Shown: positions 28,453 through 47,385, counted from the first letter of the whole stretch. The stretch: DNA of 63,164 nucleotides, filler included, from Octopus bimaculoides (GCF_001194135.2; 4 parts of 4 records of this genome joined end to end with filler, not necessarily neighbours in it); one strand, 5' to 3'. Numbers and translations are program-made. Notes: generated from the letters alone by a model not told the origin.

Positions 28453-28675
28453 GAGGAAGTTAACAGAGGTGTCAGAGATGGTAGAAGTAAAGTCAAGAGC
28501 AGGGTGGAAGTTAGAGAGGAAGGAGATGAAAAGGCAGAGCTGTTTGCGGGAGAGGGAGGTGGCTCCTATACAGTCATCTATGTAGCGACCGTATAGTTCC
28601 GGGGTCGGACCGGAGAATTGGGAGAATACTTGGGCCTCAATGTAACCAACAAAGAGGTTGGCGTAATTGGGCCCC

Positions 28676-28680
<5 letters not shown>
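28453..28680 (-). mobile_element. Penelope-like retroelement RT fragment
   Basis: MGPNYANLFVG..YGRYIDDCIG..NFHPALDFT..VNFL are PLE RT motifs 4-7. Confidence 0.9.
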
Positions 28681-28714
<34 letters not shown>

Positions 28715-28716
<2 letters not shown>

Positions 28717-28872
28717 GGGCTTCTTTCAGTTTCCATCAACCAAATCTACTCATAAGGCTTTGATTAGCCTGGGGCTATAACAGAAGACACTGGCCCAAAA
28801 TGCCATGCTGTGGAACTAAATCCAGAACCATGTGGTTGGGAAACAAACTTCTTGCTGCACATCCACACCTGC
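28715..28872 (-). mobile_element. SINE family A, 5' half
   Basis: gggcttctttcagtttcc..agaaccatgtggttg homologous to the full copies. Confidence 0.8.
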
Positions 28873-29211
28873 ACATAATATAGATAATAAAATTACTATG
28901 AAAAATTAGCTTTTGCTTGATTAAAATAAGTTTTTGTGTTTCTTCTTAGCCATTGTACTTGTTTTTTTAATGTACTGGAGTTTTTATTTGTTTGTTTGTT
29001 GTTTTTTAGTTTTTTTTTTGTTTTTTTTTCCAAAAATTATGTACATTGTAAAATACTATTTATGTTTCTCAATTAAAAAGACACTGAAGTACACATGATT
29101 AAGAATCACTGCACTACATGAAGATCAAGCAATATTCTTATAATCCAATCAATTTTAAGATTAATTAATCATTAGTTATCACAAGCTTATCATAGAATTG
29201 CAATTCCTGTT

Positions 29212-29318
29212 TCAGGTCACATTTTCGTTAATGACATCAACCTGCAGAAATGTAAACTGAACATTATCTTCATCGGTTTCAACAGCACAAATGTCTAGCT
29301 AAGTATTTAGCCACTTTC
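29212..29318 (-). CDS. Tandem-CARD gene, candidate terminal exon G (GKWLNT*LDICAVETDEDNVQFTFLQVDVINENVT*)
   Basis: Long T-tract with AGs giving exon starts at 29323 or 29318. In-frame TAG at 29299-29301 and TGA at 29212-29214. Minus-strand AATAAA near 28983-28988. Exact splice choice is ambiguous. Confidence 0.4.
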
Positions 29319-29409
29319 CTAGACTAAAATAAAACAGATAAAGAAAAAAAAAAAAAAAAATTNNNNNNNNNNAAAAAAAAAAAAAAAAAAAAATTATAAA
29401 TTACTTTAC

Positions 29410-29532
29410 CAGCTTCAGAAAGAGCTTCATATAAAGATTGTGACTTTCCTGGATATAAATCCGCCTCAAACTTATCCATAACCTTTTCAATGTCCCTTCT
29501 GCAGGTGTAGTCAATGCTGTTTGAAGGTAGCC
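29410..29532 (-). CDS. Tandem-CARD gene, exon F (second half of CARD3: LPSNSIDYTCRRDIEKVMDKFEADLYPGKSQSLYEALSEA)
   Basis: 123 nt, ttattacag| acceptor, G|gtaaag donor, phase 1-1. Joins exon E in frame. PGK.QSLYEALSEAG fits CARD helix 5. Confidence 0.8.
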
Positions 29533-31171
29533 CTGTAATAAGATAAGATACGATAAAATAAAATAATGTTAATAATAACTGTTTCTAACATAGGCACAGA
29601 GTCAGAAATATGAGGGATAGGGTTCAATTTATTAAATGAACACATGTACTTAACGACACTTACTGATCCCCCAAAAGGATGAAAAGAAACATTGATCTCT
29701 GAAGATAAAGAGCTAGAAGAAATTTTATAAGATATTTATTCTATTTATCTATACTATAAATTGCAGTGTTCTTGATTGCTTGATTGATTGATTGATTGAG
29801 TGTCGGCAGATTCACTCGAGAATGGTGCAGTGGAATCGCGTGAAATTCAGCACAGAGCGGCAGCATGGTCCGCTCATGTTCAGGAGATTTTTATTGCCCT
29901 CCAACTCCCATGGTTACCGAGATAATCGATTATTACTTTTTAAGATAGGAATATCCCATTCAAAGTGGGGAGGGGCGATTTTGTTGCCTTTCCCATGCGC
30001 GAAATTTTACGAAAAACCAGCACAATAAAGATTATTTTTTTCCAAGTAATGTGGCTGGGTTTGTTTTTCGAAAATTTTAATCAGNNNNNNNNNNNNNNNN
30101 NNNNNNNNNNNNNNNNNNNNNNNNNNNNNNNNNNNNNNNNNNNNNNNNNNNNNNNNNNNNNNNNNNNNNNNNNNNNNNNNNNNNNNNNNNNNNNNNNNNN
30201 NNNNNNNNNNNNNNNNNNNNNNNNNNNNNNNNNNNNCTCATTTAAATGTATTTTGCATGGAGTTGATGTACTTTTTAACAGGAGAGGAGTGCCTGCAGGC
30301 TGGTTCTTCTCAAGTTTATACATTTTCAGGTTCAATGTGTTTCAAATAAGTACTGACAATTGAAGGTGATTGCAAAGACAAAGAACTACCTGTTTTTTTT
30401 TAACAATTTTAACAGTGAGGACATTGGACAAAATATGTTATTGACATTAATAGTTTGTACCTCAGCTAATTACTGTTGAGAACTGCATAATCCATGTGTC
30501 ATGTTAGAGATCTAAAAGGCATTTTCGAATTTCATTATTTTCTTTAATCCAGGCAACGCTGGATATTTCTGCTAGTTATATCATATATTACAGGAGATAG
30601 TCTAGTAGCAACAACTGGTCCACACTGTGTAATATTTGATAGCACAATAATGTTATAGAGGGATGGTAAGGAATGTATCTGCTGTATCGTGTGGCAAGGT
30701 AAAAAGTCTGGTGTTGCTGGGTTGCATATCAACAGAAGGAAGCTGAGTGTTATGTTGTGCATAGCTGTGTGTGATTATTTTTAATTATTCTTAAAATATT
30801 ACTTTAAAGTATTATTAATATATTTAAGCAACTCCATTTTTGCACACATTGCTCATATGATTTTTCAAAACAAACACAGATCAATATTTTCTTCATCATG
30901 TTCATATCATATTTCAAAATATATTCAAGCAATAGACAATTCAAGAGAAAGCAGGCTTGAATTAACAGCTAAATGACTGAAACAATGAAAATTAGAGTAG
31001 AAGAATAAACTTGACAAACAGTGCATGCATGCATGCACATGTGTATGTGTGTGTATGTTTGTGTTTAATATTAATTGTGATTGTTTATTCATAGTAGCAA
31101 AAGCATACTTCCAAAGTTACATATCATATGAAAGGTAGCACTCTAGTAGTAAATAAAATATTTTAACTTAC

Positions 31172-31300
31172 CTAGATCCTGTACTAATTTGGGCCAAATA
31201 TCTCGTGGGTGGACAGTTTCAAGTATAAGCTGACGAAAATGCATGATCATTTCAGACCTGTCATTTGACATGTAATTTACTTTATCTTCACAGACAGGGA
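31172..31300 (-). CDS. Tandem-CARD gene, exon E (first half of CARD3: PVCEDKVNYMSNDRSEMIMHFRQLILETVHPRDIWPKLVQDL)
   Basis: 129 nt, ttttccag| acceptor, G|gtaagt donor, phase 1-1. FRQLILETVHPRDIWPKL is a RIG-I/MDA5-like CARD helix-1/2 motif. Confidence 0.8.
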
Positions 31301-31509
31301 CTGGAAAAGAAACATTTTTTAGGGAGAGAGTATTTTGCATCCATTTTAGTCCATGTTAGCATGAGAGAGAGTTTACTGCAGTAATCATAGCTCTAATGTC
31401 TTATTTAGTAGCAGGATGCCTTCTAAATACTAATCACAATAATTAACTACAAAAACCAGTATTTTATGAGTCAAATAAACAGAAGTAATACGTTTATGTC
31501 TTCAGTAGG

Positions 31510-31573
<64 letters not shown>

Positions 31574-31588
31574 GTATATATATACATG

Positions 31589-31619
<31 letters not shown>

Positions 31620-32748
31620 GAAATGAGAAGGAAACAAGAATTACATTATCAACTTCATTGGCTTACTGCTGTTTTTGGTATAAGAAGCAGTGTACTCACA
31701 GCTCAGTGCTTATGCATCACCTTATAGTCTCCTTGGAGCCATTAAAATAAAGTGTATGTTTATTTGGGAAATCATTTGAATACGTATCTGCTACAGACCT
31801 GTTATTATCTAATCTTGAATATTGTTGGGAGTGGCCTCTCTCCTTCAAACTGTATACACCTTTTCCATACTCTCCAAAAAAGACATACACTTTATTTTAA
31901 TGAGTCTGGGGAAGTTATAAGGTAACGTACAAGTAGTCAGCACTGAATAGCAAAAATAGCTGAAAGCCAATGAAGTTGATTACATAATTCCTGTTCCTTT
32001 GTCATTCAATTAATATTTAAATTATGATCTGTAGTCATATAACACTTTACTCTGAAGCATATGTATAATGAATTCTAACAATAGTTTATTACTGTTGCTA
32101 TGCCAAAGCAAAATCATAATATATATATACAGTTTCTGTCTACCAAATCCAATCACAAGGTTCTGGTTGGCCCAGGGCTACAGTAAAAGACACTTACCCA
32201 AAGTGCCAAATTTCAATAATAGATCACTTTATACCAGAGGAGATATTACAAACAAATTGAATTTTGATGGTTCTGACGAAATCAGGATATCTCAGAAAGA
32301 GTAAGCTGAGAGCGGTGATCTCTTTCTATTTCCCAGCTAAGATAGAGAACCAGAACATGGCAGTACAAGCTACTGAAATGCTCATTAATTAATAGCTACT
32401 CAACAAAAACTGATATTGGTCTAAACATTATCATCAACTTCACATAGTCAACCTATTTTTCTATGTAGGCATATCTTACAACTTTTCTCAGATGCCTTAA
32501 GGTCTCAAGTCTGCCTTGAATACTTCTTCCCAGAACTACCTGGTCTGCTGATACTAGCAATACTTTCCACTACAAACACAAAGCATCTCACTAGCTTACA
32601 TTCTCCATTCAAACTACATTTTTTAAACCAGCACAATCATCTCACATGCACAAATCTGACAAAATCTTTTCTAGCCCAAAATGAGAAACATAGGATAGAA
32701 ATATTTGAAAAGACCTAACTGAAAAAAATATATATATTTCTGTCTTAC

Positions 32749-33081
32749 CAGCTTCTTGGATTTTTTTCAACAAATCATTTCTGTCTAGGGATTTAAGATA
32801 TTTATCAAGGTCCTTCATCAGATATGATAAGGTAGAAGGAAAATATGAAAATAATAAAATAGCAGCTGAATTGGTTCCTTCTATTTTTTCAGCAAGTTCT
32901 ATATCTTTCAGTTGACTGTCATGAATAGTTTCCATTTTATTCAAATCATTTGCAAATGTGATAATGTTCAAATGACCTTCAGTTATTTCAGTGCTGAATA
33001 TTTCAAATATATTACAGTAGGAATTAAAATCATCTGCTTGTTCTTTCATAAATACATAGAGTTTGCAAATTGAGTTAAATT
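32749..33081 (-). CDS. Tandem-CARD gene, exon D (CARD1 last helix plus a complete CARD2)
   Basis: 333 nt, ttttcttcatttcag| acceptor, G|gtaaga donor, phase 1-1, fully open. Includes ORF 32642..33049. LKDIELAEKIEGTNSAAILLFSYF matches the CARD helix-3/4 pattern (I..E...G...AA.LL..L). Confidence 0.8.
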
Positions 33082-33189
33082 CTGAAATGAAGAAAAGATT
33101 AAATAATTATGTGAAATAGATAATTAAGTAGATAGATAAATAGATAAAAAGAAAATGGAAAAAATAATACAAAAAATAAAAGATCATAC

Positions 33190-34480
33190 TATTTTTACCC
33201 AAGCAGGTCAGTTAGGTGGGGTATGCACTGTTGCAGAATGTTGTCATCCCAAGCAACCCTCCAAGCAGTGTCCCAGTGAGTCCCCTTCTGTACGAGGTAC
33301 TTCCTCTCCTGCCATGACCATATGGCATGTGGCATGCGGCTGACCAACATAAGCTTTCACTTCAACTGGATCCTTAGACACAATGCACAAGATCCAACTT
33401 GAAAAATCAAGAAACACAATTAAACAGTCAGAGCTGACACTTCCAAATCATGCAAGTAACAGATGTATCTCAGTTTCTGATTATTGTCATTGGTTGAACA
33501 TGGAATCCGACCAACAATGACTCATAATTCTGCAAAGCATCCTGGTACCAAAAGAATTTAGGGGATACCTAAACAGCAACCAAGTCTCACAACTATATAG
33601 CAAGACTAGAAGGAGCAGAGACCTGATGACCAGAACTTTTGTCCACTTCCACAGATATCATCAGCACCAAACATCCTTATCTGGTGAGTCAACAACTGCA
33701 CCAGCACATCCAAGTTTTGTTAAAACTTTGGACTCTCAGCTATTTCATTCTCACCCACAAAGCAATCAGACAAGATGGAGTCCCCCAGGAAGCAAACAAA
33801 AGATTGGATCTTTTTCTTGACCCAAAAAACTTTAAGGCTAAATGATTTTGCTTCCTTACTCAGTGAAAGAGAGACTCAGCAAGAATAACTGCATCATCAG
33901 CAAAATCCAAGTCAGTAACCCTAGTTTCACCAATGAATACATCACAACCCAATCAAGCCACCATCTGGCCAGGTATCCAGTCTATGCAGACATTAAACAG
34001 AGTGAGAGTCAAAACACAACCCTGATGGAACCCAGATTCTAAGTAGGAAAAAGTCAGATGTTGAGCCCTCTTAACAGTCCCAGTCAGTTTCCATCTCTTC
34101 AAGGTACTTCCTCATCTGCCATGACCAAGTGACTTCCAACAGCCCAAACAGCCAGGACAGTATACTTTGCAGCTCCAGAATCCTCTAGAGCACACCCCTG
34201 TTCACTAAGTCAAAAGTTTTGCGGAGGTCAACATAAGCAGCAAGCAGACCCTGCCAAAAGCTACACCCGTGTACAATGAGTACACAGAGAGCAAGGATTC
34301 TCTAAGTAGCTGACTTTTTTGATGTGAGCCCTTACTGCTCCAGCTGCTGAGAGGCAAGTAGGTGATTCAACATACTGTTTTGAAAAACATTGGCAAAGAC
34401 CTTACCAGGCACGAAACTTCTCCCTCTATCCTCCACTGCCCAATCACCCAGTCCAATCCTATGTATTACTTCACTATATT
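33190..34480 (-). mobile_element. Old, rearranged RTE-type LINE fragments (intronic)
   Basis: Degenerate RxxWxGHV.R / GRP region. The gtacttcctc..ctgccatgacc segment occurs twice (about 33297 and 34104). Confidence 0.5.
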
Positions 34481-35559
34481 CTCCCACCCCACTATATCTT
34501 GAGAATATTATTTCCCCATCTTGAGAAAATGTCCTGACACATCTCTACCAACATCTCTCTCTCCCCCTCTCTATATTTCTAAGTCATTTTTCTCTCCTTT
34601 TTCTAACTGGAGTATCCTTGTATTTTCTTCTACAGCAAGACACCTCTCTATTCCTCTATTATTCTTTTTAATCTTTTATCAACTGACATAAAGCCAACTC
34701 TCTCAATACTACTCACCCTCCAGTCAAGGGGGTTTTAGCTTCTTAGTTAATTGGTGACCTTGCCAGTGCTGGTGCCACACAAAAAGCACCCAGGAAGTTG
34801 CATCCACCCGCAGAAACCATGTCAAAGCAGGCAATAGAGCTTGGTAGTCCGCTGTATTGTCAAACTCGTCAAATCATCTAATCCATGCCAGCATGAAAAA
34901 TGTGCATTAAATGTATGTATGTATGTACATACGTATGTATTTACTTACTAAAGTATACTGACAGTTCGAAAAAGAAAAAAGTGAACTTAGAATTTTATTT
35001 ACTTACAATTCAACCAGCTCTTGAAAACAATATACACACTTTAATTTATACTTATTCAGTAAGATGGAAATATACACTATTAATATCCAGCAGAAGTTCA
35101 CATATTTGAACAAATGAACCAACTTTCCATTTAATATTCTAACACTTTATTATAATTTAAATGCACAAAGTCAGATGAAACAGGTTCAAATTTTATGGTT
35201 ATTTTAAGTAATCAAACAGCTGTATCTGAGAACTATAAAATACATCAGAAGGCCTTTCTACAATCTACATGATTACATAAAATCACAACACTTAAACAAG
35301 CTTCTTTCAATTTTCATCTACACACAAGACTTTAATCAGGCTGGGACTGTAGAAGGCGCTTGTCTAAGGTGCCATGCAGTGAGCCTGAATCTAGAACCAT
35401 GTGGTTGGAAGTAAACTTCTAACCACACAACCATGCCTGCACCTATTGAGTTGTCTTTTTTTTCTTATAGTACATGCCTTTTTGTAAGCAGTTTTGAAAG
35501 AAACTATATAAAGTATTGTAGGTAATTGTCTATTCTCATAATCCATTGAGTCATACATG

Positions 35560-35980
35560 CAGTGCTGGATTAAGCATTATTAAGCAAAATAAGCATGTGC
35601 TTAGGGTATCAAGGGTAGGTGTTCACCAAAGAAATGGTAAATGGTTTATGGCACAAATGGAATCTCTTTAAACATGCTAAAATAATATTTAGGATGCCTT
35701 ATCTCTACTAAGTATAGAAGCAGATGTTTTACATAAGATTAATTTTGAGAATCTGATCAAAGATTTTACAATTAAAAAAGATAAGAGGAAACTTTGCAAA
35801 TATAAATAAAGTAAAAGTATACAAAAATAAACATTATTTCCCATCTTACTGTTAGTTTTGTTTCATTTTGAAAAATTAAAATTTATTTTATGGTTTATTA
35901 TTGTTTACATTTAAATTATATTTGGAGGCACCAAAATCTTTTGAGTGCTTAGCACCTGTATGGGTCTTAATCCAGCCCTG
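35560..35980. mobile_element. hAT-type MITE (421 bp, intronic)
   Basis: TIR cagtgctggattaag / cttaatccagccctg flanked by an 8-bp TSD catacatg / catacatc. Confidence 0.85.
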
Positions 35981-36144
35981 CATACATCAACATTTAAGAC
36001 TTGAAATTTATATTACAGAATTTCTGAAAGGTGAAACTCATGTACCAGTAATATATATTGCACATCCAATCCTTTGATATACTGATAGTCTAACAACCAA
36101 GTGAAATTCATTTAATGAAATGGATTATATATTTTTATGATTAC

Positions 36145-36276
36145 CTGCTTCTTTAAGTGCCACATAGTAAATATCCCATTTGTCTTCAGTAGTACTCTGT
36201 ATTAATGCATCATACATTACTTGAAATCCCTCTTCAGATGACTTTTTATGGGCTTTACAGATGGAACCTGCTTTGG
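36145..36276 (-). CDS. Tandem-CARD gene, exon C (second half of CARD1: KAGSICKAHKKSSEEGFQVMYDALIQSTTEDKWDIYYVALKEA)
   Basis: 132 nt, polypyrimidine tract plus AG (in-frame alternative AGs give starts at 36270 and 36267), G|gtaatc donor, phase 1-1. The pattern Lxx-S-x-x-E-x-x-W...AL-x-E resembles RIG-I CARD2 helices 4-5 as recalled. Confidence 0.75.
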
Positions 36277-36304
36277 CTTTGAAAGAAAGAAAATTAAACA
36301 ATTT

Positions 36305-36665
36305 ATCATCATCATCATCATTGTCGTTTAACGTCCACTTTCCATGCTAGCATGGGTTGGACGATTTAACTGAGGACTGGTGAAACCAGATGGCTACACC
36401 AGGCTCCAATCTGATTTGGCAGTTTCTACAGCTGGATGCCCTTCCTAACGCCAACCACTCCGAGAGTGTAGTGGGTGCTTTTACGTGCCACCGGCACGAA
36501 GGCCAGTCAGGCGGTACTGACAACGGCCACACTCAAAATGGTGTATTTTACGTGCCACCCGCACAAGAGCCAGTTCGGCGGCACTGGCAACGATCTCGCT
36601 CGAATGTCTTTACACGTGCCATCCGGCACAAGTGCCAGGAAGGCGATGCTGGGCACAGGAGCCAT
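36305..36665 (-). mobile_element. RTE-related short element with (GAT)n tail and internal 66-bp repeats
   Basis: (atc)n tail, gtttaacgtcc.ctttccatgctagcatggg and gatgcccttcctaacgccaacc, followed by three minisatellite units. A partial opposite-orientation copy lies at about 34730-34915. Confidence 0.7.
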
Positions 36666-37360
36666 TGACGGTTTCGCTCATTTTACCAACTGACTTGTAA
36701 ATTTAGCAATTTACAAGTTTATTCATTGCATTTTTGTAAATTATCTGTGTTTTAGTGAAAATAGTATTTTTTGGTATGAGTTGTAACTGTATGCAGAATA
36801 CTGCTTTTTAAATTTCAACTTCTAGCTTATGAAACAGTATGCAGAATCAAGACATAAAAAGGAAACTGAATCGCAGATCTGCATAGTATGTACTAGCATG
36901 AAGATATAGACATAAATAATAATGATAAAGCATATTCAATTCCAGTTTGCTATGCCTCCATTAGTGTCACAGAGAGGATACAGTGGAAGAGTCTGTCTTC
37001 CATTACCAATTCTTTCTAAGTATGAATTTTAACCTCTTGCACACTGTAGGTGCATCATGTCACTGTATGAGTTTTCTCCCCTGTAGTAACAGGACAGTGG
37101 CAGGGGAAACAATTCTAGAGAAAATGTAGTGTGCTTAAAGGTTAAGACTTTTGTGGTGAGGTAAATGTGATTTTTAACCTTCATATAGCTCTCAATGGTA
37201 CACGTATTATAAATACTTTATACAAGTGATATGAAGCAGGTATAATCAGATTGTTGTGGACTTAGCTTGCCAGAGGCTTACTGCATTGCAAAAAAATCTA
37301 AACATTCTCCTCTACATTTGATAAGATTATAGCAGAAATAAAAACGCATAACAAACTTAC

Positions 37361-37416
37361 GTCCTATCTTTAACACTGTGCCAATGTCAGGTAACGATAC
37401 AAAAACCAAGGAAATA
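37361..37416 (-). CDS. Tandem-CARD gene, candidate exon B (ISLVFVSLPDIGTVLKIG)
   Basis: 56 nt, cag| acceptor, C|gtaagt consensus donor, phase 2 to 1. VSLPDIGTVL parallels the VHPRDIWPKL CARD helix-2 motif of exon E. Confidence 0.5.
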
Positions 37417-37700
37417 CTGCATTCAAATTAGTGTGTAGTACATATGTCATTGTTATAATCAGAATATGCACAATATCAACTGTACTTCCACCCTGTCACC
37501 CTATAGCCACCTCATCACCAACTGTCTTTCCTTTCCCTTTACCATTCCATCACATTATCTTTGCAGTACATCCCTTTCAACTCTTCCAATACGACCCACT
37601 ATTTCTGATGTCCTTCACAAATGCACACACACACACACACACACATATATATGCATTTATATATATGTGTATGTGTGTGTGTACACACACACACACATAC

Positions 37701-37816
37701 ATTAGTTTCTTGATTAAAACTGGAGCTGAAAGTTTGTTTCTTTTCTCAAGTTTCACTCTCATAGAACATTGATCCATTAATTCATACAATGTATATTTCA
37801 CAATCTTCAGATGAAA
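37701..37816 (-). CDS. Tandem-CARD gene, candidate exon A (putative ATG at 37777; MDQCSMRVKLEKRNKLSAPVLIKKL)
   Basis: NAGNAG acceptor (tag/cag), open frame, donor AT|gtatgt in phase 2, which matches the phase-2 acceptor of exon B. Weak sequence similarity on its own. Confidence 0.45.
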
Positions 37817-37879
37817 CTGCTATAGCTCAGTATTGGAGGTGAGTGTATGTATGTGTGTTTATATATATATATGGGAGAA

Positions 37880-38450
37880 TTTACGAAAAAAACAACAGGG
37901 GAGGGGTCGATTAGGGAAGATGTGGGAGGTGGAGGGGTCGGACTGGAGGTGCCGGAAAGCTTGGAGTATGGTGCGTTGGAGGGGTGGTGGTGGGATGGTA
38001 GGTGAGGGGAAAAGGTAGGTGGGAAACGGCAGGGCGGGTTTGGGGGGAGAGAGCAGATGCACGGTCCCTGGAACGTGCTCTGGCAAGGGCGGTGTGGATG
38101 GTGGTGGAGGGATATGTAGGCTAAAGTGGCGAGCCATGAGTTGAGACTGAGTCTCAAAGTCATATATATTCATTTGATTCATGCCATCCAAAGCAAAACA
38201 CACAAGAGAATAATATCCCCAGCTTGGCCAAAAGGATTTGCATGATATTATCCAGTACAAATATCCATGACATAGAACTTCAAGGACTGAATCATATACA
38301 TTTTGACAGAAGCTATCCACCATCTTTAATTAATAAGAGAATACAACAAGCCAAGAAATTCAAAATCCAGGAACTAATACAAACAAAACATAGAAATATA
38401 TTGTAATTGAAAGTCCTACCATATAATTCTACCAACAATCCTCAAAAGAA
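37880..38450. mobile_element. Two head-to-head Penelope-like fragments (minus about 37880-38158; plus about 38162-38450)
   Basis: Minus: DFETQSQLMARHF..ILQAFRHLQSDPSTSHIFP. Plus: DSCHPK..LAKRIC..RSYPPSLINKRIQQAK. Both are PLE RT-thumb regions. Confidence 0.75.
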
Positions 38451-38536
38451 TGACACATCATATACCCAAATATTCCAACACTAAAAACAAAAACCCAGTC
38501 TAAACCAAATCCTCTAAACATATTACTCTTTTTTCT

Positions 38537-38748
38537 CTCTTTTACTCTTTTACTTGTTTCAGTCATTTGACTGCGGCCATGCTGGAGCACCGCCTTTAGC
38601 CGAGCAAATCAACCCCAGGACTTATTCTTTGGAAGCCTAGTACTTATTCTATTGGTCTCTTTTGCCGAACCGCTAAGTAACGGGGACGTAAATACACCAG
38701 CATCGTTTGTCAAGCGATGTTGGGGGGGACAAACCCAGACACACAAAC

Positions 38749-38787
<39 letters not shown>

Positions 38788-38950
38788 CAACGGGCTTCTC
38801 TCAGTTTCCGTCTACCAAATCCACTCACAAAGCTTTGGTCGGCCCGAGGCTATAGCAGAAGACACTTGCCCAAGGTGCCACGCAGTAGGACTGAACCCAG
38901 AACCATGTGGTTGGTAAGCAAGCAACTTACCACACAGCCACTCCCGCGCC
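38537..38950 (-). mobile_element. SINE family A, full length and young (tRNA-derived, octopus OK/OR-like)
   Basis: ggcgcgggagtggctgtgtggtaag head with A/B-box-like motifs, central (CA)/(TA) tract, (GAGTAAAA)n tail. Confidence 0.9.
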
Positions 38951-39142
38951 TATATATACCATCATAGAGAACAAAAGACATCCCAAATCAAAGGAAAAAA
39001 ATTAACAAAGGCCAAACTTCACACAATAACAATAGGATCAGCAACAAAACAAATACAGAAGACCCAACTGTGGTGTACATTTTAAACCTTTGCCTATCCT
39101 GTGTATCACATCTGATACACAGGACATATTTCACCAGCTTCC

Positions 39143-39143
<1 letters not shown>

Positions 39144-39179
<36 letters not shown>

Positions 39180-41830
39180 AATTATTGTATACAGTGCTCA
39201 GGTGCACTGCAACTTGTCAAAAGTGTGCATAAAGCATATGCAGTATTGTACAAATGTCTGGAAAGTGAATAGTGTATGAGTCAGATACATGCTTGCGTGT
39301 GTATGGAGGGGAGAAAATCAGGTGTAGTGTTGGCGAATCTTAGGAAGGATGGAAGTTTTGAAGGATGCAGTGCTCTGACAACTAACAACTGATGCCGGCA
39401 GCTTGTTCCATACTTCAGCAACTTTTATCATGAAAAAGTGTTTCCGAAAGTCATGGGAGCTGTGCTGTTTTCTGACTTTGTAAACATGTCCATGGGTGTT
39501 AGACAGGTGGAATTTGAAAAGGTGCTCAGAGTTATTGTTAGTAAGATGGTTAATAATTTTATGGGTGTCTGCCAAGTCAGCCGCCAGACGTCGGAGTTTC
39601 AATGTATCCATACCCAGGGAAGTAAGGCGTTTGGAATATGGCAAATGCCTGATGGAGGGTATTCTCTTGGTTGCACGTCGCTGAACGGTTTCCAGACGAT
39701 TAATATCCTGGGCAAGATAGGGGTTCCAGACCGGAGATGCAAATTCCAGGTGAGGCTGCACCATAGCTATATAAAGCCTCAGATAAATAGCTGGAGAGTA
39801 GCTCACAAAGGACTTAGTAAGTGATGTCAAGACACCCTCAGCCTTCTTGGCAATTTTAGCAATGTGTTTTGTCCAATGTAAATTGCTGTCAATAATAATG
39901 CACAGGTCACGTTCGCAAGAAGACTTTTTGAGATTAGTGTTGTGGAGGGAGTAAGTAAACGCTGGGTTTTTCCTCCCAAAATGCATGGTGGTACATTTGT
40001 CCACAGCCAGCTTGAGTTGCCAGTCCATGATCCATTGCTGGATCATGTCCAGGTCTGATTGCAATAAAGATCAATAGTGTACAGGATCTGTCCTTTTTAT
40101 TTCGAGGTACAGCTTGATGTCATCTGCCTATTTCAGCACTGTGACATTCTTTAAGCTAGCATCTATATCATTAATATATGCAACAAATAGAAGGGGGCCA
40201 ATAACAGATCCCTGTGGTACACCAGATGTCATCTCATAGGGTGAAGAGTGCTGTCCTAGAATTGTGACAACCTTTTTTCAGCTGATAATAAAGGACTTCA
40301 ACCAGTTATAGAGATCATCTCTTACATCTATTGCAGAGAGTTTTACCATAAGTCTTTTGTGTGGCACAGAATTAAAAGCCTTAGCAAAGTCAAGGTAAAC
40401 AACATCCACCCAGGAGCCGCCATCAGTGATTCGGGTAATGTCCTCAAGAAACTCAATGAGTTGATTACAGCAGCTGGAGTTAGGAATAAATCCAAATTGT
40501 GATGGTTGGATGAGGTTGTGAGACTTCCAGAAGTTCCAGAAGGTTTCTCAGACACAGGATTCCTTCAGTTTGGTGATGCAGCTAGTAAGACTGACAGGGC
40601 AATAGCTGACAGGTGATGTGCGGTCGCCTTTTTTGAACAGAGGGATAACACTGGCAGTTTTCCACTGCTCTGGAGTAACACCCTTGTCAAGACAGAGTTG
40701 AAAGAATAGTGAAAGCTGGTTCAGAAGAAAGTACCCACCACGTTTGAGAAGTAGGCATGTAACACCATTGAGACCAGGAGAGGCATTGCTGGTGTAAATT
40801 TCATAGTAGTTATACAGGGTGTCCACAAAGTCTGGGTACACATATATATACATATACAGGGTGTCCACATACATATACAGGGTGTCCACAAATATATACA
40901 TATACAGGGTGTCCACATATATGTGTACCCAGACTTTGTGGACCCCCTGTATATGTATATATATATGTGTGTACCCAGACACTGTGGACACCCTGTAGAG
41001 TCCAGTGTCAGGGGTGATGGAAATGGAACATTTTGATTTTCGACAGTAAAGATGCCTGCATAGCATCCAGCAATAATTTCTGCACATTCTTTAGGATTGT
41101 CAGTAATCTGGCCTGTGTGGGGATTGCAAAGGGGACCAACTGGAGAGTGAGGTCTCTGCTTCGAATGTACATACCTCCAGAACACTTTGCTGTCAGGGTT
41201 GGTTGCTATGCACTGTTCAAATTCAAGCACGGCCTTTTTTTTGTCACCTGCTTGAGATGGTTGGATGATCTATTGCGCTTTTTCCTGTTAATCTCTGATT
41301 TGTGCATTTTGTATTCCAGTTCAGCATTACGGCGTTCTTTCCTGGCAAGTCGGACTGCAGCAGTCTCCCAAATTGCACTATTGGGTGGTTTTTTGTGCTT
41401 GCATAGTACCGATGCTGCACATGCCGTCCATATTGAATTCAGAATGTTCTGAAGTATAGTGTTCACATCTCCATAGACATAAAATTCGAGCCAGTTTGGG
41501 CATCGCAGTTCGGGATGATAAGAGTTCCAGTTTGCTTTATTCCAGTCAAAGCGGGCAGTTTGAAGATGGTTGTGGTTTTTGCTACAACCAATCAGAGACA
41601 AGTCAGCTATGATCATGGAATGATCAGATCACTTAAAGGTTCTTCAGTGGTGACACTAATAATTGTTTCAGGAGAAGTGGTGAATAGCAGATCCAAAGTG
41701 TTGTTACCCCTTGTAGGATTTTTTTTACATCTAGCCCCTATGCAAAATTGGAGAAGAAACTGGAGAGGACATGAAATGTAAAAACCAAACTGGATTAGTT
41801 TATGCGCAACTCCATTGTCTCCCAAGATAA
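39144..41830 (-). mobile_element. CR1-group LINE, 5'-truncated (APE C-part + RT + C-terminus), multiple frameshifts
   Basis: PTRGNNTLDLLFT, WKTASVIPLFKKGDR..YxPVSLTS, GVPQGSVIGP, ADDIKLY, HLEFASPVWNP..LETVQRRATK. (ATT)n tail at 39144-39177. Confidence 0.92.
40815..40995. mobile_element. Tc1/mariner MITE inserted at TA inside the CR1 LINE
   Basis: TIR cagggtgtccacaaagtctgggtacac and its inverse. Removing it and one TA restores the host frame (..DSITTMKFTP..). Confidence 0.9.
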
Positions 41831-41838
41831 AAGGGTGC

Positions 41839-41888
<50 letters not shown>

Positions 41889-42208
41889 NNNNNNNNNNNN
41901 NNNNNNNNNNNNNNNNNNNNNNNNNNNNNNNNNNNNNNNNNNNNNNNNNNNNNNNNNNNNNNNNNNNNNNNNNNNNNNNNNNNNNNNNNNNNNNNNNNNN
42001 NNNNNNNNNNNNNNNNNNNNNNNNNNNNNNNNNNNNNNNNNNNNNNNNNNNNNNNNNNNNNNNNNNNNNNNNNNNNNNNNNNNNNNNNNNNNNNNNNNNN
42101 NNNNNNNNNNNNNNNNNNNNNNNNNNNNNNNNNNNNNNNNNNNNNNTATATATACACACACACACACATACACACACACACACATACACACACACGCACG
42201 CACGCATG

Positions 42209-42239
<31 letters not shown>

Positions 42240-42349
42240 TTTTATTCTTCCATTCTTTTATTACTTTCAACATGAAGGCTGGGGCCATGCTTGAACACTG
42301 CCAATGCAATTGGTACTACTTCAACAGTACTTAACTTTTGGTGAACAAG

Positions 42350-42950
42350 AGAGTTGAAGAAAAGCAACTGCACTCAGTTGCATTTCCTGCCATGACAATG
42401 ATTCATCTAAAATCGCAGCTAGTAAGTTATCCAGATGAATCTTGAATCTAGTAAATGTAGATTTAGAACTTTCTTTGGCAAGATATTAAAGAGTTGTGGG
42501 TCTTTGAAATATAGACTATTGATAAGGAGAGTAGGATCTTCAGGACTGTGCAGTGATGAGTAATTCAGGGATTGGTATTGCTCCAAAACCAAAATTTGGC
42601 AGGAGCCTTTCAGTGATTTTCCATCTATAGATTACCATTGTCCATCTTTCCTTTCCTCACATGATCATCTTTCTTTTCTTTCAGTCTGTCTTACAGCCTA
42701 GACACATTCTTATCTGTCTCCTCTTGTAACTTTTCTCTTGTCAAAGACAATATTCTTCCAGTGTTCGCTACCTTACCTCGTCTGGCCTACTGGCACCCCA
42801 TGTTTGTTTTCATTTGGTTTGTTGTGTCTGCAGTGTCCTGTTTTTGTTACCAAATTTGACCCTCTGCAAATCCCAAATTTTATTTTGGTTTGCAGGAGCA
42901 ACTGCCCTTCGAAGCCTCGTATTGTGGTTAATTGCTCGAAAATAGGAGTA
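42350..42950 (-). mobile_element. LINE 3' fragment (decayed)
   Basis: ..WKI..NF..NSLYFKDPQLFNILPK..FKIHLDNLL.., typical post-RT C-terminus. Confidence 0.6.
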
Positions 42951-43029
42951 GATGGACAACCGACAATTGATGAAGGGTCACTCTTTATGTTACTTGTCTT
43001 GTTTTCCATTTGTTTCTCTCATTGTTCGT

Positions 43030-43330
43030 GTACCCAAGTTGAGTCTGAAGCCATGTGGAAAGATGAATGGAGGCATAACATTGCCATCCCTAGTGATCAC
43101 TCCAAACACCATGATGCTCACTGGATGTTTGAGTTTTATCACTCTGGTACATGTTTTGGGGATACGGCAAGCCAACGATTGTTCTGTGTGTTCTCCATTT
43201 GTTTCTATTGGAGCTTCCGGTATGAATGCCAAGCTGTTCAGCATGTCATTGCCAAATTTCTGGCAGAGTGAATTGTGTCAACAGATTCCTATTCTCACAG
43301 ATGGTGCCCAACTGAACCTATACTGTGTAG
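43030..43330 (-). mobile_element. DD37D/maT-like transposase fragment
   Basis: KLKHPVSIMVFGVITRDGNVMPPFIFPHGFRLN. Confidence 0.7.
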
Positions 43331-43644
43331 TCAACAAAATCAAAAAACAATGTGCATGCATTGTGTGTGTGTGTGTGTTTGTGTGCGTGCGTGTGTGCGT
43401 GCATGCGTGTGAAAAGGCAAATGGTTTAATGGTTAGGGTCTTGTACTTGTGACTGGAAGATCGTGGTTTGGATTTCCTGGCCGAGCATTGCATTGTGTTC
43501 TTCAGCAAAGTACTTCATTTTAGGTTACTCTTCGATCATTTCCTCATCGCACATTTGGCACTATAGACAAGTCATCTGTATGGTTGTTCAACAAGAAATT
43601 GCTGAACTCACATACGTCATCTAATGACGGGAAAGTTCATTGTG

Positions 43645-43698
<54 letters not shown>

Positions 43699-43850
43699 TA
43701 TATATACACACACATATATAATATATATATATATGTATACACAAACATATATGTATGTATATATGTATACATTATATATATATATATATATAAATAGAGA
43801 AAAGGATAAAGAGAACAATGGTAAAGTTAGAAATATATTTTATGGATAGA

Positions 43851-43899
43851 GTCTTACAGCTGTTTCAGGGAAGATCCAATGCATCCCTTCATCGGAGAC
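43851..43899 (-). ncRNA. Minimal type-I hammerhead ribozyme in the PLE pLTR
   Basis: gtct-CCGATGA-aggga(tgcattggatct)tccct-GAAA-c agct g-TA-agac. Stem I 4 bp, stem II 5 bp, palindromic stem III, GUA cleavage triplet. The core has C at position 4. Confidence 0.75.
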
Positions 43900-44723
43900 A
43901 GAAATAGTAGAGGAATCGAATATTATATCTATAAGCGGTGAGTTATAGTAGGAAGTGAGAGTGAGTGTGATGCGCTGAAAAAAGAAAGAAAAAACAGTAC
44001 TTGGAGTGTAGCTTCATTCCAGTAGTAAGTATCAGTGTAAATAATCCTTGTGGGAATTTTCCAGAGATAGTTGTTGTAGCAAAGGCTGAATTAGCAGAGG
44101 TGGATATATGTCATATCGTGTCCGAAGTATACTGCGTGTGTTTACTTAAAGGATATCCCAAATCAAGTGAGAGATGTGTGCAGGGTAAATAGGTCAAGTC
44201 TTAAAGACAGAAGGGGAAGGGGATAGAGAAGTTATTCAGGTGGGGAATGGTAGTGATATGTTATGTGGTCAGTTAATCTGACTGGACAGAGAGAATAAGT
44301 ATTGGGAGTAAAGGAGGAAGGGGGGATAGAGGTAAAGGTTTAGTAAGGAAGAATGAATGCGCAGAGGTAGTATGGAGGGGTAGGCTACAAGTGGTGAGGG
44401 TATGGGTGACATTCCAAAGATAGTATTAAAGGAAAAAAGGAGTGAGAGAAAGAATTAGTAGTACCATATTTTAAAAAATAGAGCTAAACCTAATTTACAG
44501 ATGGTAGAAGGGGGATCAGAAGTTACTAAGGGTGGAATGTGTTTATCAACAAGGGGCCTGTATGTGGTGGTGGTGTTATTGGCAAGGAAGTGTAAAGGAA
44601 GTAAATTAGGGAAAAATATATTAAGTAGTGATAGGATCAAAAAAGAAATAAATCTATTCTAAAGATGGTGTAAGGGGGACTATTTTGCTAGGTCGAATAG
44701 GTTGCCTATAGGGAGCTGTGTGA

Positions 44724-45563
44724 TTATGTTGTGTGGTAATTTGTGCATTTTTGTCTGTGATAAAATTTAAATGTATGGAAAAAACGGTGATTGCAGGTAC
44801 TAAATGCTTCATTATATCGATTAAGTTGAGTGGGAGAATTGTATTTTAAAATATGGAATGCCTCCTTTAAGCAGAACTTGCAATTAGAGCGCTGGCCCTG
44901 GTATGGAATTCCGGAGTCTAGGATGAACCATTTTAAAGTATACTGGGTATTTGTGCTTTTGAGGTGATGAATGTGGTTGGCTAATGTTGTAGATTTACTG
45001 TGTTTGTCATATCTAAAAGAATGCAAATGGGCTGCGTAGCGATGTTTGAAGTTTTTAGTTGCACCTATGTATGTAGCTGTAGAGTTATGTAATAGATTTC
45101 TTACGGTGCATTTATATGTTACGTTGTATCTTACGCAATGCGTTTGAAGCGGGCAGATTGTCCCAGAGCGACAGTTACAAGTAGATGAGACTTGGGGGTT
45201 GTGTTCAGTGGTGGGTGAGATATTATTGTTGGAGGATATGTTATTTGGGGATGTAGAAGAATCTAGATCAATGGAATTATTGTTATAGTTATTTGTCCTA
45301 TCATTGTTATTATTATAGGGTATGGTATTGTTATTATCGAGTATATTAGTGGGTTGGGATTTACTGTGGTTTTGTTCAAGTGTACGATCGTTAGTGTTAG
45401 ATGAACGTATATTAATGTCCATGTTGGGTATACGCATGCACCGAGTGTTAGCGCTAGCATAGTTATAGTTGTGTAAGTTTTGGTAATAGAGCGAAAGTTC
45501 ATGTTTATTAGAAGTTGCTATAATAGATTCGAAGTTAGGAGTGGTAGAATATGACAGTTTCAA
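44724..45563 (-). CDS. PLE GIY-YIG endonuclease with Asn-rich linker
   Basis: KLSYSTTPN..CNCRSGTICPL..VTYKCTV..TYIGAT..FKHRY..CKFCLKEAFHI..LNRYNE..CNH. Confidence 0.9.
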   Translation of the reverse strand: MKLSYSTTPNFESIIATSNKHELSLYYQNLHNYNYASANTRCMRIPNMDINIRSSNTNDRTLEQNHSKSQPTNILDNNNTIPYNNNNDRTNNYNNNSIDLDSSTSPNNISSNNNISPTTEHNPQVSSTCNCRSGTICPLQTHCVRYNVTYKCTVRNLLHNSTATYIGATKNFKHRYAAHLHSFRYDKHSKSTTLANHIHHLKSTNTQYTLKWFILDSGIPYQGQRSNCKFCLKEAFHILKYNSPTQLNRYNEAFSTCNHRFFHTFKFYHRQKCTNYHTT

Positions 45564-46864
45564 AGTGGATCTGTCGAATATAGAATGGTATTTGTATTAT
45601 CGGGGGAAGTTAGAATCCAGTATTTTAAGTTCCTAGTGTTAAGTGAGAATGGTGGGGTATACCAAAGTATAGAGCGGCCACCACTTTTTTGTGGGGTTCT
45701 GTGTATGTTGTAATCTAAGTATTTAGGTGGAGGGCAGTTGTCTACATTTTTGGTGTAGCTAACTGTTTTATACATCTTAGATTTAGCCCTAGTGTTATAA
45801 GTGTGTTTGTGGGGTCTGTTGGAATATATGGGTGGTTGGTTGTGGTTGTGATTAATGTTATGTCTTTGGGGTGTGATTTGGGACATAAATTGTTTAAGTC
45901 TGGTGTTATGGATGTATTTTATTTGTTGGGAGAAACCACTAGCCGCGAGTGCTTGATTGTAGTATGGAGTGTGATTGTTAAAGATTTCTTCGGAAGAGGA
46001 TAGATCAGATATGCGGGTTGAGATACCCATGATTATGTTATCGAAAGTAGATCTGTGGTGATTAGAGTGAATATTGAGGTATTTTAGGTACTGGTTGGGT
46101 TTATGATAGGGGGAGTGTTGCGAGTTTGATAGGTTTAGAGAGACATCTAGAAAGTTAGCCGTTTTATACGCGTTTTCAAATGTTATTGATAGATTCATAT
46201 TTGAGAAGTATTTGTGTAGATCCTTTTTAGTCCTCTCCATGGAAGATTTATTAATAGCCTTGGTAATTAGTAAAGCATCGTCCCTATATAGACCACCACG
46301 GATATTAGGGAAATGTGATCGTAATTGGTGAAGTATATATAATCCAACTAAATCTGTGGCCTGAGCGGAATCAGAAGATCCCATGGTTATATCAAATAAT
46401 TTGTTAGAGCTATTACTATGTTGATTAGCTCGGCACCAGAGTTTGTTTTCGAAGGATATAAGAGTTCTGTGTGCATTGATTATAATGTTAATTTCCAAAG
46501 GGGTTATGCTAGTAAGATTCCTAGTGAAAAGAATAGCCTTATTTAAAAGTTTAGGAGAGATAGAGGAGTAATAGTTGTTAATATCAAATTGAAGGAACGA
46601 GAAAGAGTTTTTGTTCTCCAAGGTGTGGAACCATGCAATAACCTCCCCGGTGTGGTACCATAGATTAGCATGTAGTTTCTCTTTGACAATAGGTATTATC
46701 TTGTCTAAAATATTTTTGCTGATTCTTCCGAGGTCGGATTTGGTAGGGCATATTAGGCGTATAGATGGTTTTGTAATGAAATCCTTCTTATGATCCTTGA
46801 AGTTGAAGTGTGGAGGTGCAGGGCAGTACGGTTCTGTTCTGTCGTCCACATTTAGTTTCCTCAT
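45560..46864 (-). CDS. PLE reverse transcriptase (frameshifted near 45600-45640)
   Basis: SDLGRISK..FDINNYYSSI..FDITMGSSDSAQATDLVGLY..GLYRDDAL..FLDVSLNL..Y.NIHSNH. Confidence 0.9.
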   Translation of the reverse strand: MRKLNVDDRTEPYCPAPPHFNFKDHKKDFITKPSIRLICPTKSDLGRISKNILDKIIPIVKEKLHANLWYHTGEVIAWFHTLENKNSFSFLQFDINNYYSSISPKLLNKAILFTRNLTSITPLEINIIINAHRTLISFENKLWCRANQHSNSSNKLFDITMGSSDSAQATDLVGLYILHQLRSHFPNIRGGLYRDDALLITKAINKSSMERTKKDLHKYFSNMNLSITFENAYKTANFLDVSLNLSNSQHSPYHKPNQYLKYLNIHSNHHRSTFDNIIMGISTRISDLSSSEEIFNNHTPYYNQALAASGFSQQIKYIHNTRLKQFMSQITPQRHNINHNHNQPPIYSNRPHKHTYNTRAKSKMYKTVSYTKNVDNCPPPKYLDYNIHRTPQKSGGRSILWYTPPFSLNTRNLKYWILTSPDNTNTILYSTDPL

Positions 46865-47294: not shown

Positions 47295-47325
<31 letters not shown>

Positions 47326-47338
47326 CATATATATATAC

Positions 47339-47385
<47 letters not shown>

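What the first reader, a model, noticed from the sequence alone, without database searches (positions are those of the whole stretch)
29212..37816. Hidden gene encoding three tandem RIG-I-like CARDs with no visible helicase
Seen: exons A-F have GT-AG ends and compatible phases, and join into 850 nt of open frame: MDQCSMRVKLEKRNKLSAPVLIKKLIISLVFVSLPDIGTVLKIGPKAGSICKAHKKSSEEGFQVMYDALIQSTTEDKWDIYYVALKEAEFNSICKLYVFMKEQADDFNSYCNIFEIFSTEITEGHLNIITFANDLNKMETIHDSQLKDIELAEKIEGTNSAAILLFSYFPSTLSYLMKDLDKYLKSLDRNDLLKKIQEAVPVCEDKVNYMSNDRSEMIMHFRQLILETVHPRDIWPKLVQDLGLPSNSIDYTCRRDIEKVMDKFEADLYPGKSQSLYEALSEAG. Only exons D and E show up in the ORF track. Established: RIG-I and MDA5 carry two N-terminal CARDs ahead of a DExD/H helicase, and CARD-only proteins act as decoy regulators in vertebrates. 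Inference: three ~90-aa CARD-like units followed by an early stop and a polyA-like signal suggest a 3xCARD-only adaptor or decoy of cephalopod innate-immune or death signalling. Caveat: an artificial join at 28353-28452 could separate it from downstream helicase exons, and exons A and B are less secure.
Basis: partly seen in the sequence, partly recalled or inferred. Interest (0 to 1): 0.8.

Follow-up and report, generated by a model that had tools for sequence, protein, structure and literature searches.

The report
CARD exons of octopus RIG-I-like receptor
The stretch holds four real exons (2 to 5) of the already annotated RIG-I-like viral-RNA sensor gene of Octopus bimaculoides, which goes on to a fourth CARD, a helicase and an RNA-binding domain outside this piece, so it is not a hidden CARD-only decoy gene.

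Summary
Joined, they are identical to residues 34-272 of RefSeq XP_052821716.1, "ATP-dependent RNA helicase DHX58 isoform X1" of Octopus bimaculoides. Exons A and B are not supported. They lie in intron 1. The true first exon is about 10 kb beyond the piece's edge and is conserved in Argonauta.

Exon F does not end at a stop. It ends at a phase-1 GT donor and is spliced to an exon 6.7 kb beyond the piece. That exon encodes a canonical RLR CARD, and a DExD/H helicase and the RIG-I C-terminal domain follow.

"RIG-I-like CARDs" is supported. A profile of units 1 and 3 finds mouse RIG-I tandem CARDs in the PDB (E 4.8e-5). Unit 2 aligns with the canonical unit 4 (E 3.9e-5).

Both N gaps are intronic and hide no exon.

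One modest new point: the protein seems to carry four tandem CARDs in an A-B-A-B pattern, which suggests a duplicated 2CARD module. Three of them fall below Pfam thresholds. The one survey found classed this receptor as CARD-less because the old gene model was split.

The parts
36145..36276 (-). It encodes residues 34-77 of XP_052821716.1, helices 3-5 of CARD-like unit 1. It is skipped in isoform X2.
   Evidence: Exact match to P0007. Conserved in Argonauta P0003 (tblastn E 2e-7). X1 minus X2 = 44 aa.
32749..33081 (-). It encodes helix 6 of unit 1 plus helices 1-5 of CARD-like unit 2.
   Evidence: 99-100% identical to P0001 and P0007. Homologues: P0002 at 64%, P0003 at 39%, P0005 at 31%. AF2 gives a helical bundle, pLDDT 70-86 in the alignment-based model. 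hhalign to canonical unit 4 gives E 3.9e-5.
31172..31300 (-). It encodes helix 6 of unit 2 plus the first half of CARD-like unit 3.
   Evidence: 100% identical to P0001 and P0007. Good AG acceptor and GTAAGT donor.
29410..29532 (-). It encodes the second half of unit 3 up to helix 5 and ends at donor G|gtaaag, not at a stop.
   Evidence: 100% identical to P0007 residues 232-273. P0007 continues ...SEAG|YEILCLKIDGG from an exon at L001 44797-45201, outside the piece.
36277..51319 (-). Part of intron 1. Exon 1 lies beyond the piece. The stretch is rich in retroelement fragments, SINE-like repeats, microsatellites and assembly gaps.
   Evidence: The piece equals L001 38095..15229 and exon 1 is at L001 5001-5105. 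Exon 1 was not found in the piece. Weak RVT_1 and endonuclease-RT hits.
37701..37777 (-). It is an ORF fragment in intron 1 whose proposed donor sits in a TG microsatellite.
   Evidence: Absent from P0001 and P0007. No counterpart in the Argonauta locus. Sequence context.
37360..37414 (-).
   Evidence: Absent from P0001 and P0007. No counterpart in Argonauta. The residues that precede exon 2 in both species come from the conserved exon 1 (..HMSFIR / ..NMEFLR).
30085..30236 (.). Assembly gap inside intron 4, between exons E and F.
   Evidence: The same gap is in GCA_001194135.2. No residues are missing at the E-F junction in RefSeq or the Argonauta orthologue.
29363..29372 (.). Assembly gap in an A/T homopolymer of intron 5, 38 nt downstream of the exon 5 donor.
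28453..29409 (-). Start of intron 5. It contains a SINE-like repeat and an RT fragment with a YIDD motif, and no RLR exon.
   Evidence: The next exon is 6.7 kb beyond the piece.

Best explanation
Shown: the minus strand of window 36276-29410 carries exons 2-5 of the Octopus bimaculoides RIG-I-like receptor gene. RefSeq names it 'DHX58' (XP_052821716.1, 1122 aa; CM046602.1, an 86-kb gene). A 2022 survey lists it as the only RLR it found in this species. The four exons encode residues 34-272, which are most of CARD-like unit 1, all of unit 2, and unit 3 up to helix 5. Every exon boundary falls in the helix 5 / helix 6 loop ('..EAG') in phase 1. Helix 6 of unit 3 is therefore encoded by the next exon, and the domain cannot be complete without it. 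Outside the piece the protein continues with a canonical RLR CARD (unit 4), an SF2 DExD/H helicase with the RIG-I-type insertion domain, and the RIG-I C-terminal RNA-recognition domain.

Inferred from the established RIG-I/MDA5 mechanism: the C-terminal domain and helicase bind viral RNA in the cytosol. This releases the N-terminal CARD array. The array oligomerises and seeds CARD-CARD polymerisation of a MAVS-like adaptor, and antiviral transcription follows.

Supported but not proven: the N-terminus is a four-CARD array with an A-B-A-B pattern, meaning a tandem duplication of the 2CARD module. The exon pattern repeats in the same way (two exons for the A-type unit, one exon for the B-type unit, twice).
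For: Identity with the annotated gene:
- Exon D found P0001 at 99% identity in 1.84 billion representatives.
- The cluster members are named RefSeq and UniProt octopus proteins.
- Exons C-F joined are an exact substring of P0007.
- The piece is 100% identical, gaps included, to the chromosome locus. Exon 1 lies upstream and exons 6 onward lie downstream on the same strand.

Architecture:
- Pfam on P0001 gives CARD_2 7e-14, DEAD 1.6e-23, RIG-I_C 4e-7, Helicase_C 7e-17 and RIG-I_C-RD 7e-19.
- The Argonauta orthologue has the same collinear architecture and 41% identity over the N-terminus.

CARD nature of the window-encoded units:
- A profile of units 1 and 3 hits mouse RIG-I 2CARD 6bzh at E 4.8e-5. 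Next come human RIG-I 2CARD and Apaf-1 CARD.
- There are sub-threshold CARD_2 hits for each unit in at least one species.
- hhalign gives U2~U4 E 3.9e-5 and U1~U3 E 3.2e-4, with the other four pairs at E 0.087 or worse.
- The pair U1-U2 against the pair U3-U4 is collinear over 138 columns, E 3e-5.
- AF2 gives six helices for unit 2, and the top Foldseek hits are MDA5 and RIG-I 2CARD and MAVS CARD.
Against: - None of units 1-3 reaches Pfam's gathering score. The octopus unit 3 scores best against Death rather than CARD.
- AF2 confidence is low outside unit 2 (mean pLDDT 51.7). All Foldseek E-values are above 0.4.
- The profiles rest on only 2-4 sequences.
- I examined no transcript reads. The splice junctions rest on RefSeq predictions, splice consensus and orthologue collinearity.
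- RNA sensing and MAVS signalling are inferred from family membership. They have not been tested in any cephalopod.
Confidence: 0.93

Rival explanations
1. One reading: besides the full-length receptor, the locus produces a CARD-only product that acts as a decoy or regulator of CARD signalling. It could arise by intron retention or early polyadenylation.
For: - The 2015 annotation holds a 365-aa CARD-only model, P0008 (XP_014782651.1 / A0A0L8GAN5). Its last 15 residues are a read-through of the intron after exon 6 up to a stop.
- On the minus strand a ctgcag acceptor at 29243-29242 would give G + TGA directly after exon F. I read this from the sequence.
- Isoform X2 shows that the N-terminus is alternatively spliced.
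Against: - P0008 comes from the fragmented first assembly, where the helicase half was a separate model, P0010. It is most simply a truncation artefact.
- It would contain four CARDs, not three, and would end after exon 6, not after exon F.
- Stopping right after exon F would leave unit 3 without helix 6. That helix is encoded by exon 6 (the Argonauta unit 3 CARD_2 alignment runs to profile position 92 of 93 only when the exon 6 residues are included).
- No transcript evidence is available.
Confidence: 0.06
2. Units 1-3 are death-fold domains of another subfamily (Death domain proper), or a helical linker, rather than CARDs. The receptor would then be a single-CARD ('cnidarian-type') RLR with a long N-terminal extension.
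For: - The octopus unit 3's only Pfam hit is Death, at E 0.001-0.014.
- Octopus unit 2 has no Pfam hit.
- The unit 2 profile against the PDB gives no CARD hit.
- Death-type N-termini exist in other lophotrochozoan RLRs (PMC8998645).
Against: - Argonauta unit 3 scores better against CARD_2 (E 0.0012, near full length) than against Death (E 0.041).
- The units 1+3 profile finds only CARDs at the top of the PDB list.
- Unit 2 aligns in register with the canonical CARD_2 unit 4.
- The unit 2 homologue P0005 hits CARD_2 at E 4e-4.
Confidence: 0.12
3. The exon chain is a chance assembly of open frames and GT-AG sites in AT-rich intronic DNA.
For: This is true for exons A and B only. They have no database or orthologue support, and the donor of A lies in a TG microsatellite.
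Against: C-F are identical to a RefSeq protein. They are conserved at 37-45% identity, with the same exon order, in Argonauta.
Confidence: 0.01

Closest known systems
Vertebrate RIG-I (DDX58) and MDA5 (IFIH1)
   Same: - N-terminal RLR-type CARDs, then a DExD/H helicase with a Hel2i-type insertion, then the RIG-I C-terminal domain (Pfam).
- The best PDB matches of the cryptic units are RIG-I and MDA5 tandem CARDs.
   Different: - There appear to be four CARD-like units instead of two. Three are too divergent for Pfam thresholds.
- Per PMC8998645, lophotrochozoan RLRs do not show the RIG-I/MDA5/LGP2 divergence.
LGP2 (DHX58), the name RefSeq gives this gene
   Same: Helicase core and C-terminal domain.
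   Different: LGP2 is defined by having no CARDs. This protein has a significant CARD_2 plus three more CARD-like units, so the name reflects best-hit naming rather than architecture.
Oyster CgRIG-I and other mollusc RLRs (PMC5557890; PMC8998645)
   Same: They are lophotrochozoan RLRs with CARD or other death-fold N-termini. Variation in the N-terminal domain through exon-level changes is the theme of PMC8998645.
   Different: - That survey lists the N-termini Death, CARD, CARD-CARD, DED, IG, SAM and CASc, with no four-CARD type mentioned in the text or legends I read.
- It scored the octopus gene from the helicase-only model XP_014769581.1, as type V2.
Vertebrate CARD-only proteins (COP/CARD16, ICEBERG/CARD18, INCA/CARD17); from my own knowledge
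   Same: Death-fold CARD units.
   Different: Those are single-CARD proteins that end after the CARD. Here the reading frame is spliced on into a helicase, so there is no CARD-only product in the RefSeq models.

Membership tests
RIG-I-like receptor (RLR) | SF2 DExD/H helicase core with a RIG-I-type insertion domain | tested here: met
   On P0001: DEAD 1.6e-23, ResIII 1.9e-21, RIG-I_C 4e-7, Helicase_C 6.7e-17. These exons lie outside the window piece.
RIG-I-like receptor (RLR) | RIG-I C-terminal RNA-recognition (regulatory) domain | tested here: met
   RIG-I_C-RD E 7.2e-19, 68.5 bits against a cut-off of 25.6.
RIG-I-like receptor (RLR) | The window's exons belong to the same gene and protein as the helicase | tested here: met
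   Exons C-F are an exact substring of XP_052821716.1. The piece is 100% identical to the chromosome locus, with the helicase exons downstream on the same strand.
RIG-I-like receptor (RLR) | RNA-dependent activation and MAVS-type signalling | not testable with these tools
   This needs biochemistry or cell assays. It is inferred from family membership only.
CARD (death-fold) domain, for units 1-3 encoded in the window | Significant match to a CARD profile (Pfam CARD or CARD_2 at gathering score) | tested here: not met
   Best scores are U1 at 14.5 bits, Argonauta U3 at 19.2 bits and P0005 (U2) at 20.8 bits, against a cut-off of 28.2. Only unit 4, outside the window, passes, at 52.1 bits.
CARD (death-fold) domain, for units 1-3 encoded in the window | Profile-level homology to solved CARDs or to the canonical CARD in the same protein | tested here: met
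   The U1+U3 profile hits RIG-I 2CARD 6bzh at E 4.8e-5, and nine of the next ten hits are RIG-I 2CARD or Apaf-1 CARD chains. U2 vs U4 by hhalign gives E 3.9e-5, probability 70%. The two-unit pair alignment gives E 3e-5.
CARD (death-fold) domain, for units 1-3 encoded in the window | Six-helix bundle fold | tested here: inconclusive
   AF2 gives six helices for unit 2 at pLDDT 70-86, but units 1 and 3 are below 50. The top Foldseek hits are CARDs, with E of 0.44 or higher.
CARD-only decoy proteins | The protein ends after the CARD(s), with no effector or sensor domain | tested here: not met
   There is no stop after exon F. The donor is used in both RefSeq isoforms and the orthologue has the same architecture.
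LGP2 / DHX58 | Absence of N-terminal CARDs | tested here: not met
   CARD_2 at E 7e-14 at residues 248-338 of P0001, plus three CARD-like units.

The most novel reading that the evidence does not exclude
Octopod RLRs (Octopus, Argonauta) carry four tandem CARDs that arose by duplication of the whole 2CARD module (A-B-A-B, with a repeated pattern of two exons then one exon). The three N-terminal units are cryptic to Pfam. A single receptor molecule would then contribute two 2CARD modules to the helical CARD assembly that seeds MAVS. This could lower the oligomerisation threshold for signalling, and skipping of exon 2 (isoform X2) could tune it.
Probability: 0.5. Interest if true: 0.45.

Novelty: already known. 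Interest (0 to 1): 0.3.

Why it matters
As a gene discovery it does not matter, because the gene and these exons are in RefSeq and UniProt.

Its use is corrective:
- The sole octopus RLR listed in the 2022 lophotrochozoan survey was scored as a CARD-less (V2, LGP2-like) receptor, from a split gene model. RefSeq still names it DHX58.
- The window shows that it has an unusually long CARD array.

If the four-CARD, duplicated-2CARD architecture holds, it adds a new N-terminal type to the catalogue of invertebrate RLRs. It would also give a natural test case for how CARD copy number sets the threshold for MAVS nucleation.

Tried and rejected
- **The search for homologous proteins** with exons C-F and with the corrected N-terminus returned nothing, although the proteins are in the collection. 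The word-index search evidently does not reach them.
- **Spliced queries**: I used the contiguous exon D instead, and that search solved the case.
- **Exact-ORF look-up** of the exon D ORF found nothing.
- **Direct pairwise BLAST/MAFFT** of the three units showed no significant internal similarity. Only profiles built with the orthologue did.
- **Unit 2 profile against the PDB** gave only spurious weak hits, PAN3 and Abraxas. The unit 1 profile alone gave none.
- **RefSeq exon 1** could not be found in the piece because it lies outside it.
- **Literature search** for a four-CARD RLR found none.
- **Chance explanation** was considered and rejected for exons C-F. The early stop was rejected as well.


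Full report
**1. What is in the sequence**

The coding strand is minus. Four of them have textbook splice sites and are all phase 1-1:
- C: 36276..36145 (132 nt)
- D: 33081..32749 (333 nt)
- E: 31300..31172 (129 nt)
- F: 29532..29410 (123 nt)

Each of C, D and F ends '...GAAGC[AT]G|gta', which encodes '..EAG'.

After exon F there is no stop. The frame continues KVIYNFFFF... into a poly-T run and the 10-N gap. The sequence at that point is a donor of the same form as those that end C and D. This alone suggested that the gene continues towards lower coordinates, beyond the piece.

**2. The gaps, tested first**

- 30085-30236 lies between the donor of E (31171) and the acceptor of F (29533), so it is inside an intron.
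- 29363-29372 lies 38 nt downstream of the donor of F, in an A/T homopolymer, so it is also inside an intron.
- The piece is 100% identical to the public chromosome-level assembly, including these gaps.
- The reading frame of the spliced product does not depend on the gap lengths.
- A hidden exon between E and F is excluded. The RefSeq protein and the Argonauta orthologue are collinear, with no extra residues at that junction. The Argonauta E-F intron is ungapped.

**3. Identification**

The PDB sequence search gave nothing. The word-indexed protein search also gave nothing.

A full HMMER search of 1.84 billion representatives with the contiguous exon D translation returned these hits:
- P0001: 1078 aa, 99% identical.
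- P0003: 1097 aa, 39% identical.
- P0002 and P0005: two short ORF-like homologues.

The cluster look-up named them:

| Id | Accession | Name / note |
|---|---|---|
| P0001 | XP_052821717.1 | 'ATP-dependent RNA helicase DHX58 isoform X2 [Octopus bimaculoides]' |
| P0007 | XP_052821716.1 | isoform X1, 1122 aa |
| P0008 | A0A0L8GAN5 / XP_014782651.1 | 'CARD domain-containing protein', 365 aa, first assembly |
| P0010 | XP_014769581.1 | 'probable ATP-dependent RNA helicase DDX58', 754 aa, helicase only, first assembly |
| P0003 | GAB1607394.1 | 'probable ATP-dependent RNA helicase DHX58 [Argonauta hians]' |

Exons C-F joined are an exact substring of P0007, starting at residue 34.

**4. The locus**

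The look-up of encoding contigs returned the gene on CM046602.1 (GCA_001194135.2). It spans 86 kb.
- The piece equals L001 38095..15229 on the reverse strand.
- Exon 1 (MAEGYEKLFNSIKPLCAGYIEATHLLPHMSFIR) is at L001 5001-5105, about 10 kb beyond the piece's upstream edge. That is why it is not in the piece.
- The exon after F is at L001 44797-45201, 6.7 kb beyond the downstream edge. At least nine further exons follow, out to L001 90789.

The window therefore holds exons 2-5 only.

**5.

- They are in neither RefSeq isoform.
- In Argonauta the residues that precede the exon C equivalent (MEFLR|PKAGK) match the tail of octopus exon 1 (MSFIR|PKAGS).
- The open frame upstream of the annotated Argonauta start reads MDDFKYETLFNSIKDLCETYIISSHLLTNMEFLR. 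It is 62% identical to octopus exon 1.
- The A+B peptide has no counterpart in the Argonauta locus.
- The proposed donor of A sits in a TG microsatellite.

A and B are best regarded as chance open frames in intron 1.

**6. Architecture**

Pfam on P0001 gives CARD_2 (248-338, E 7e-14), DEAD, ResIII, RIG-I_C, Helicase_C and RIG-I_C-RD. All are above threshold, and P0003 gives the same. This is a RIG-I-like receptor.

The old CARD-only model P0008 ends in 15 residues read through from the intron after exon 6. It belongs to the fragmented first assembly, in which the helicase half was a separate model.

**7. Are the window-encoded units CARDs?**

Individually they are weak:

| Unit | Best Pfam hit |
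|---|---|
| U1 (with the true exon 1) | CARD_2, E 0.036, near full length |
| Octopus U2 | none |
| Argonauta U2 | CARD_2, E 0.048 |
| P0005 (a U2 homologue) | CARD_2, E 4e-4 |
| Octopus U3 | Death, E 0.0065 |
| Argonauta U3 | CARD_2, E 0.0012 (profile 5-92 of 93) |

With small profiles the picture sharpens:
- hhalign gives U2~U4 at E 3.9e-5 (79 columns in register) and U1~U3 at E 3.2e-4. The other four pairs give E 0.087 or worse.
- The pair U1-U2 aligns collinearly with the pair U3-U4 over 138 columns, E 3e-5.
- A four-sequence profile of U1+U3, which contains no canonical CARD, finds mouse RIG-I tandem CARDs (6bzh) at E 4.8e-5. Human RIG-I 2CARD and Apaf-1 CARD follow.

The structure predictions point the same way but weakly:
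- AF2 of exon D alone is all-helical with pLDDT 60.
- In a 5-sequence run unit 2 reaches pLDDT 70-86 as six helices, but the rest is poor.
- Foldseek lists MDA5 2CARD, RIG-I 2CARD and MAVS CARD first, without significant E-values.

I conclude that the units are divergent RLR-type CARDs (death-fold with good confidence, CARD subfamily likely). The array looks like a duplicated 2CARD.

The exon pattern agrees with a duplication. U1 is encoded by two exons, U2 by one, U3 by two and U4 by one. All the boundaries between units lie in the helix 5 / helix 6 loop, in phase 1.

**8. Mechanism**

Shown:
- gene identity
- exon structure
- domain architecture

Inferred from established RLR biology: RNA is recognised by the C-terminal domain and helicase. 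The CARD array is released, and CARD-CARD nucleation of a MAVS-like adaptor follows. An oyster RIG-I/MAVS pathway has been characterised (PMC5557890; only its title and abstract were seen).

Speculative:
- Four CARDs in one chain supply two 2CARD modules per receptor.
- In-frame skipping of the 132-nt exon 2 (isoform X2) removes helices 3-5 of unit 1 and may modulate signalling.

**9. Comparison with the literature**

Yao et al. 2022 (PMC8998645) surveyed lophotrochozoan RLRs.
- They list one octopus gene, ObiRLR = XP_014769581.1. They label it 'ObiRLR-V2', the CARD-less type, and report that it is expressed in five tissues.
- That accession is the helicase-only half from the first assembly. 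The CARD-less classification is therefore an artefact of a split model.
- Their N-terminal types, in the text and legends I read, do not include a four-CARD array.
- A text search for 'four CARD' with RIG-I and mollusc found nothing.

**10. Verdict**

- The CARD assignment is supported.
- 'Hidden', 'three', 'early stop' and 'CARD-only decoy' are wrong.
- The feature is an already annotated gene.
- The residual interest is the cryptic, apparently duplicated CARD array and the correction of the published classification.

Noticed in passing
literature / P0010 (XP_014769581.1) against window 29410-36276: PMC8998645 classifies the single O. bimaculoides RLR as CARD-less type V2, using the helicase-only model from the first assembly. 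RefSeq names the full gene DHX58 (LGP2). Both conflict with the CARD array encoded here.
   Followed up: yes
L003 2914-3015 (Argonauta hians BAAFZT010000059.1): The Argonauta model GAB1607394.1 starts at an internal Met. The open frame extends 29 codons upstream (MDDFKYETLFNSIKDLCETYIISSHLLTN...) and matches octopus exon 1, so that model is probably N-terminally truncated.
   Followed up: partly
window 36145-36276 (-): Exon 2 is a symmetric 132-nt cassette that RefSeq isoform X2 skips. Skipping keeps the frame but removes helices 3-5 of the first CARD-like unit.
   Followed up: partly
window 29237-29243 (-): A ctgcag acceptor-like site lies 167 nt downstream of the exon 5 donor. If used, it would give Gly then TGA at once. 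It is not used in any model I saw.
   Followed up: no
window 44724-46864 (-): Two long adjacent ORFs (434 and 279 aa) lie in intron 1, in the same orientation as the gene. They have no Pfam hit at E <= 0.01. The second contains a YIGATKNFKHRYAAH motif that reminds me of GIY-YIG endonucleases of Penelope-like retroelements (from memory, untested).
   Followed up: partly
window 39318-40064 (-), 48410-48664 (+), 28453-28713 (-): Retroelement fragments. There is a weak RVT_1 tail (E 0.004) and an endonuclease-reverse transcriptase hit (Exo_endo_phos_2, E 7e-5). An ORF with a YIDD motif is cut by the piece's edge.
   Followed up: partly
window 28712-28882, 38787-38958, 35351-35446: Three copies, about 79% identical, of a short SINE-like repeat lie in introns 1, 2 and 5 of the gene.
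   Followed up: partly
L002 10001-10366 (ENA ERZ21867824, contig ctg123290l): A 121-aa ORF, 31% identical to exon D, has the best CARD_2 score of any unit 2 homologue (E 4e-4). It sits on a 748-kb contig from an organism that the tool output does not name. No other RLR exon was found within 10 kb.
   Followed up: partly
window 36300-36680: Directly upstream of exon 2 (higher coordinates, in intron 1) there is a GC-richer repeat with an internal direct repeat (36479-36573 against 36546-36638). It is probably another interspersed element.
   Followed up: no
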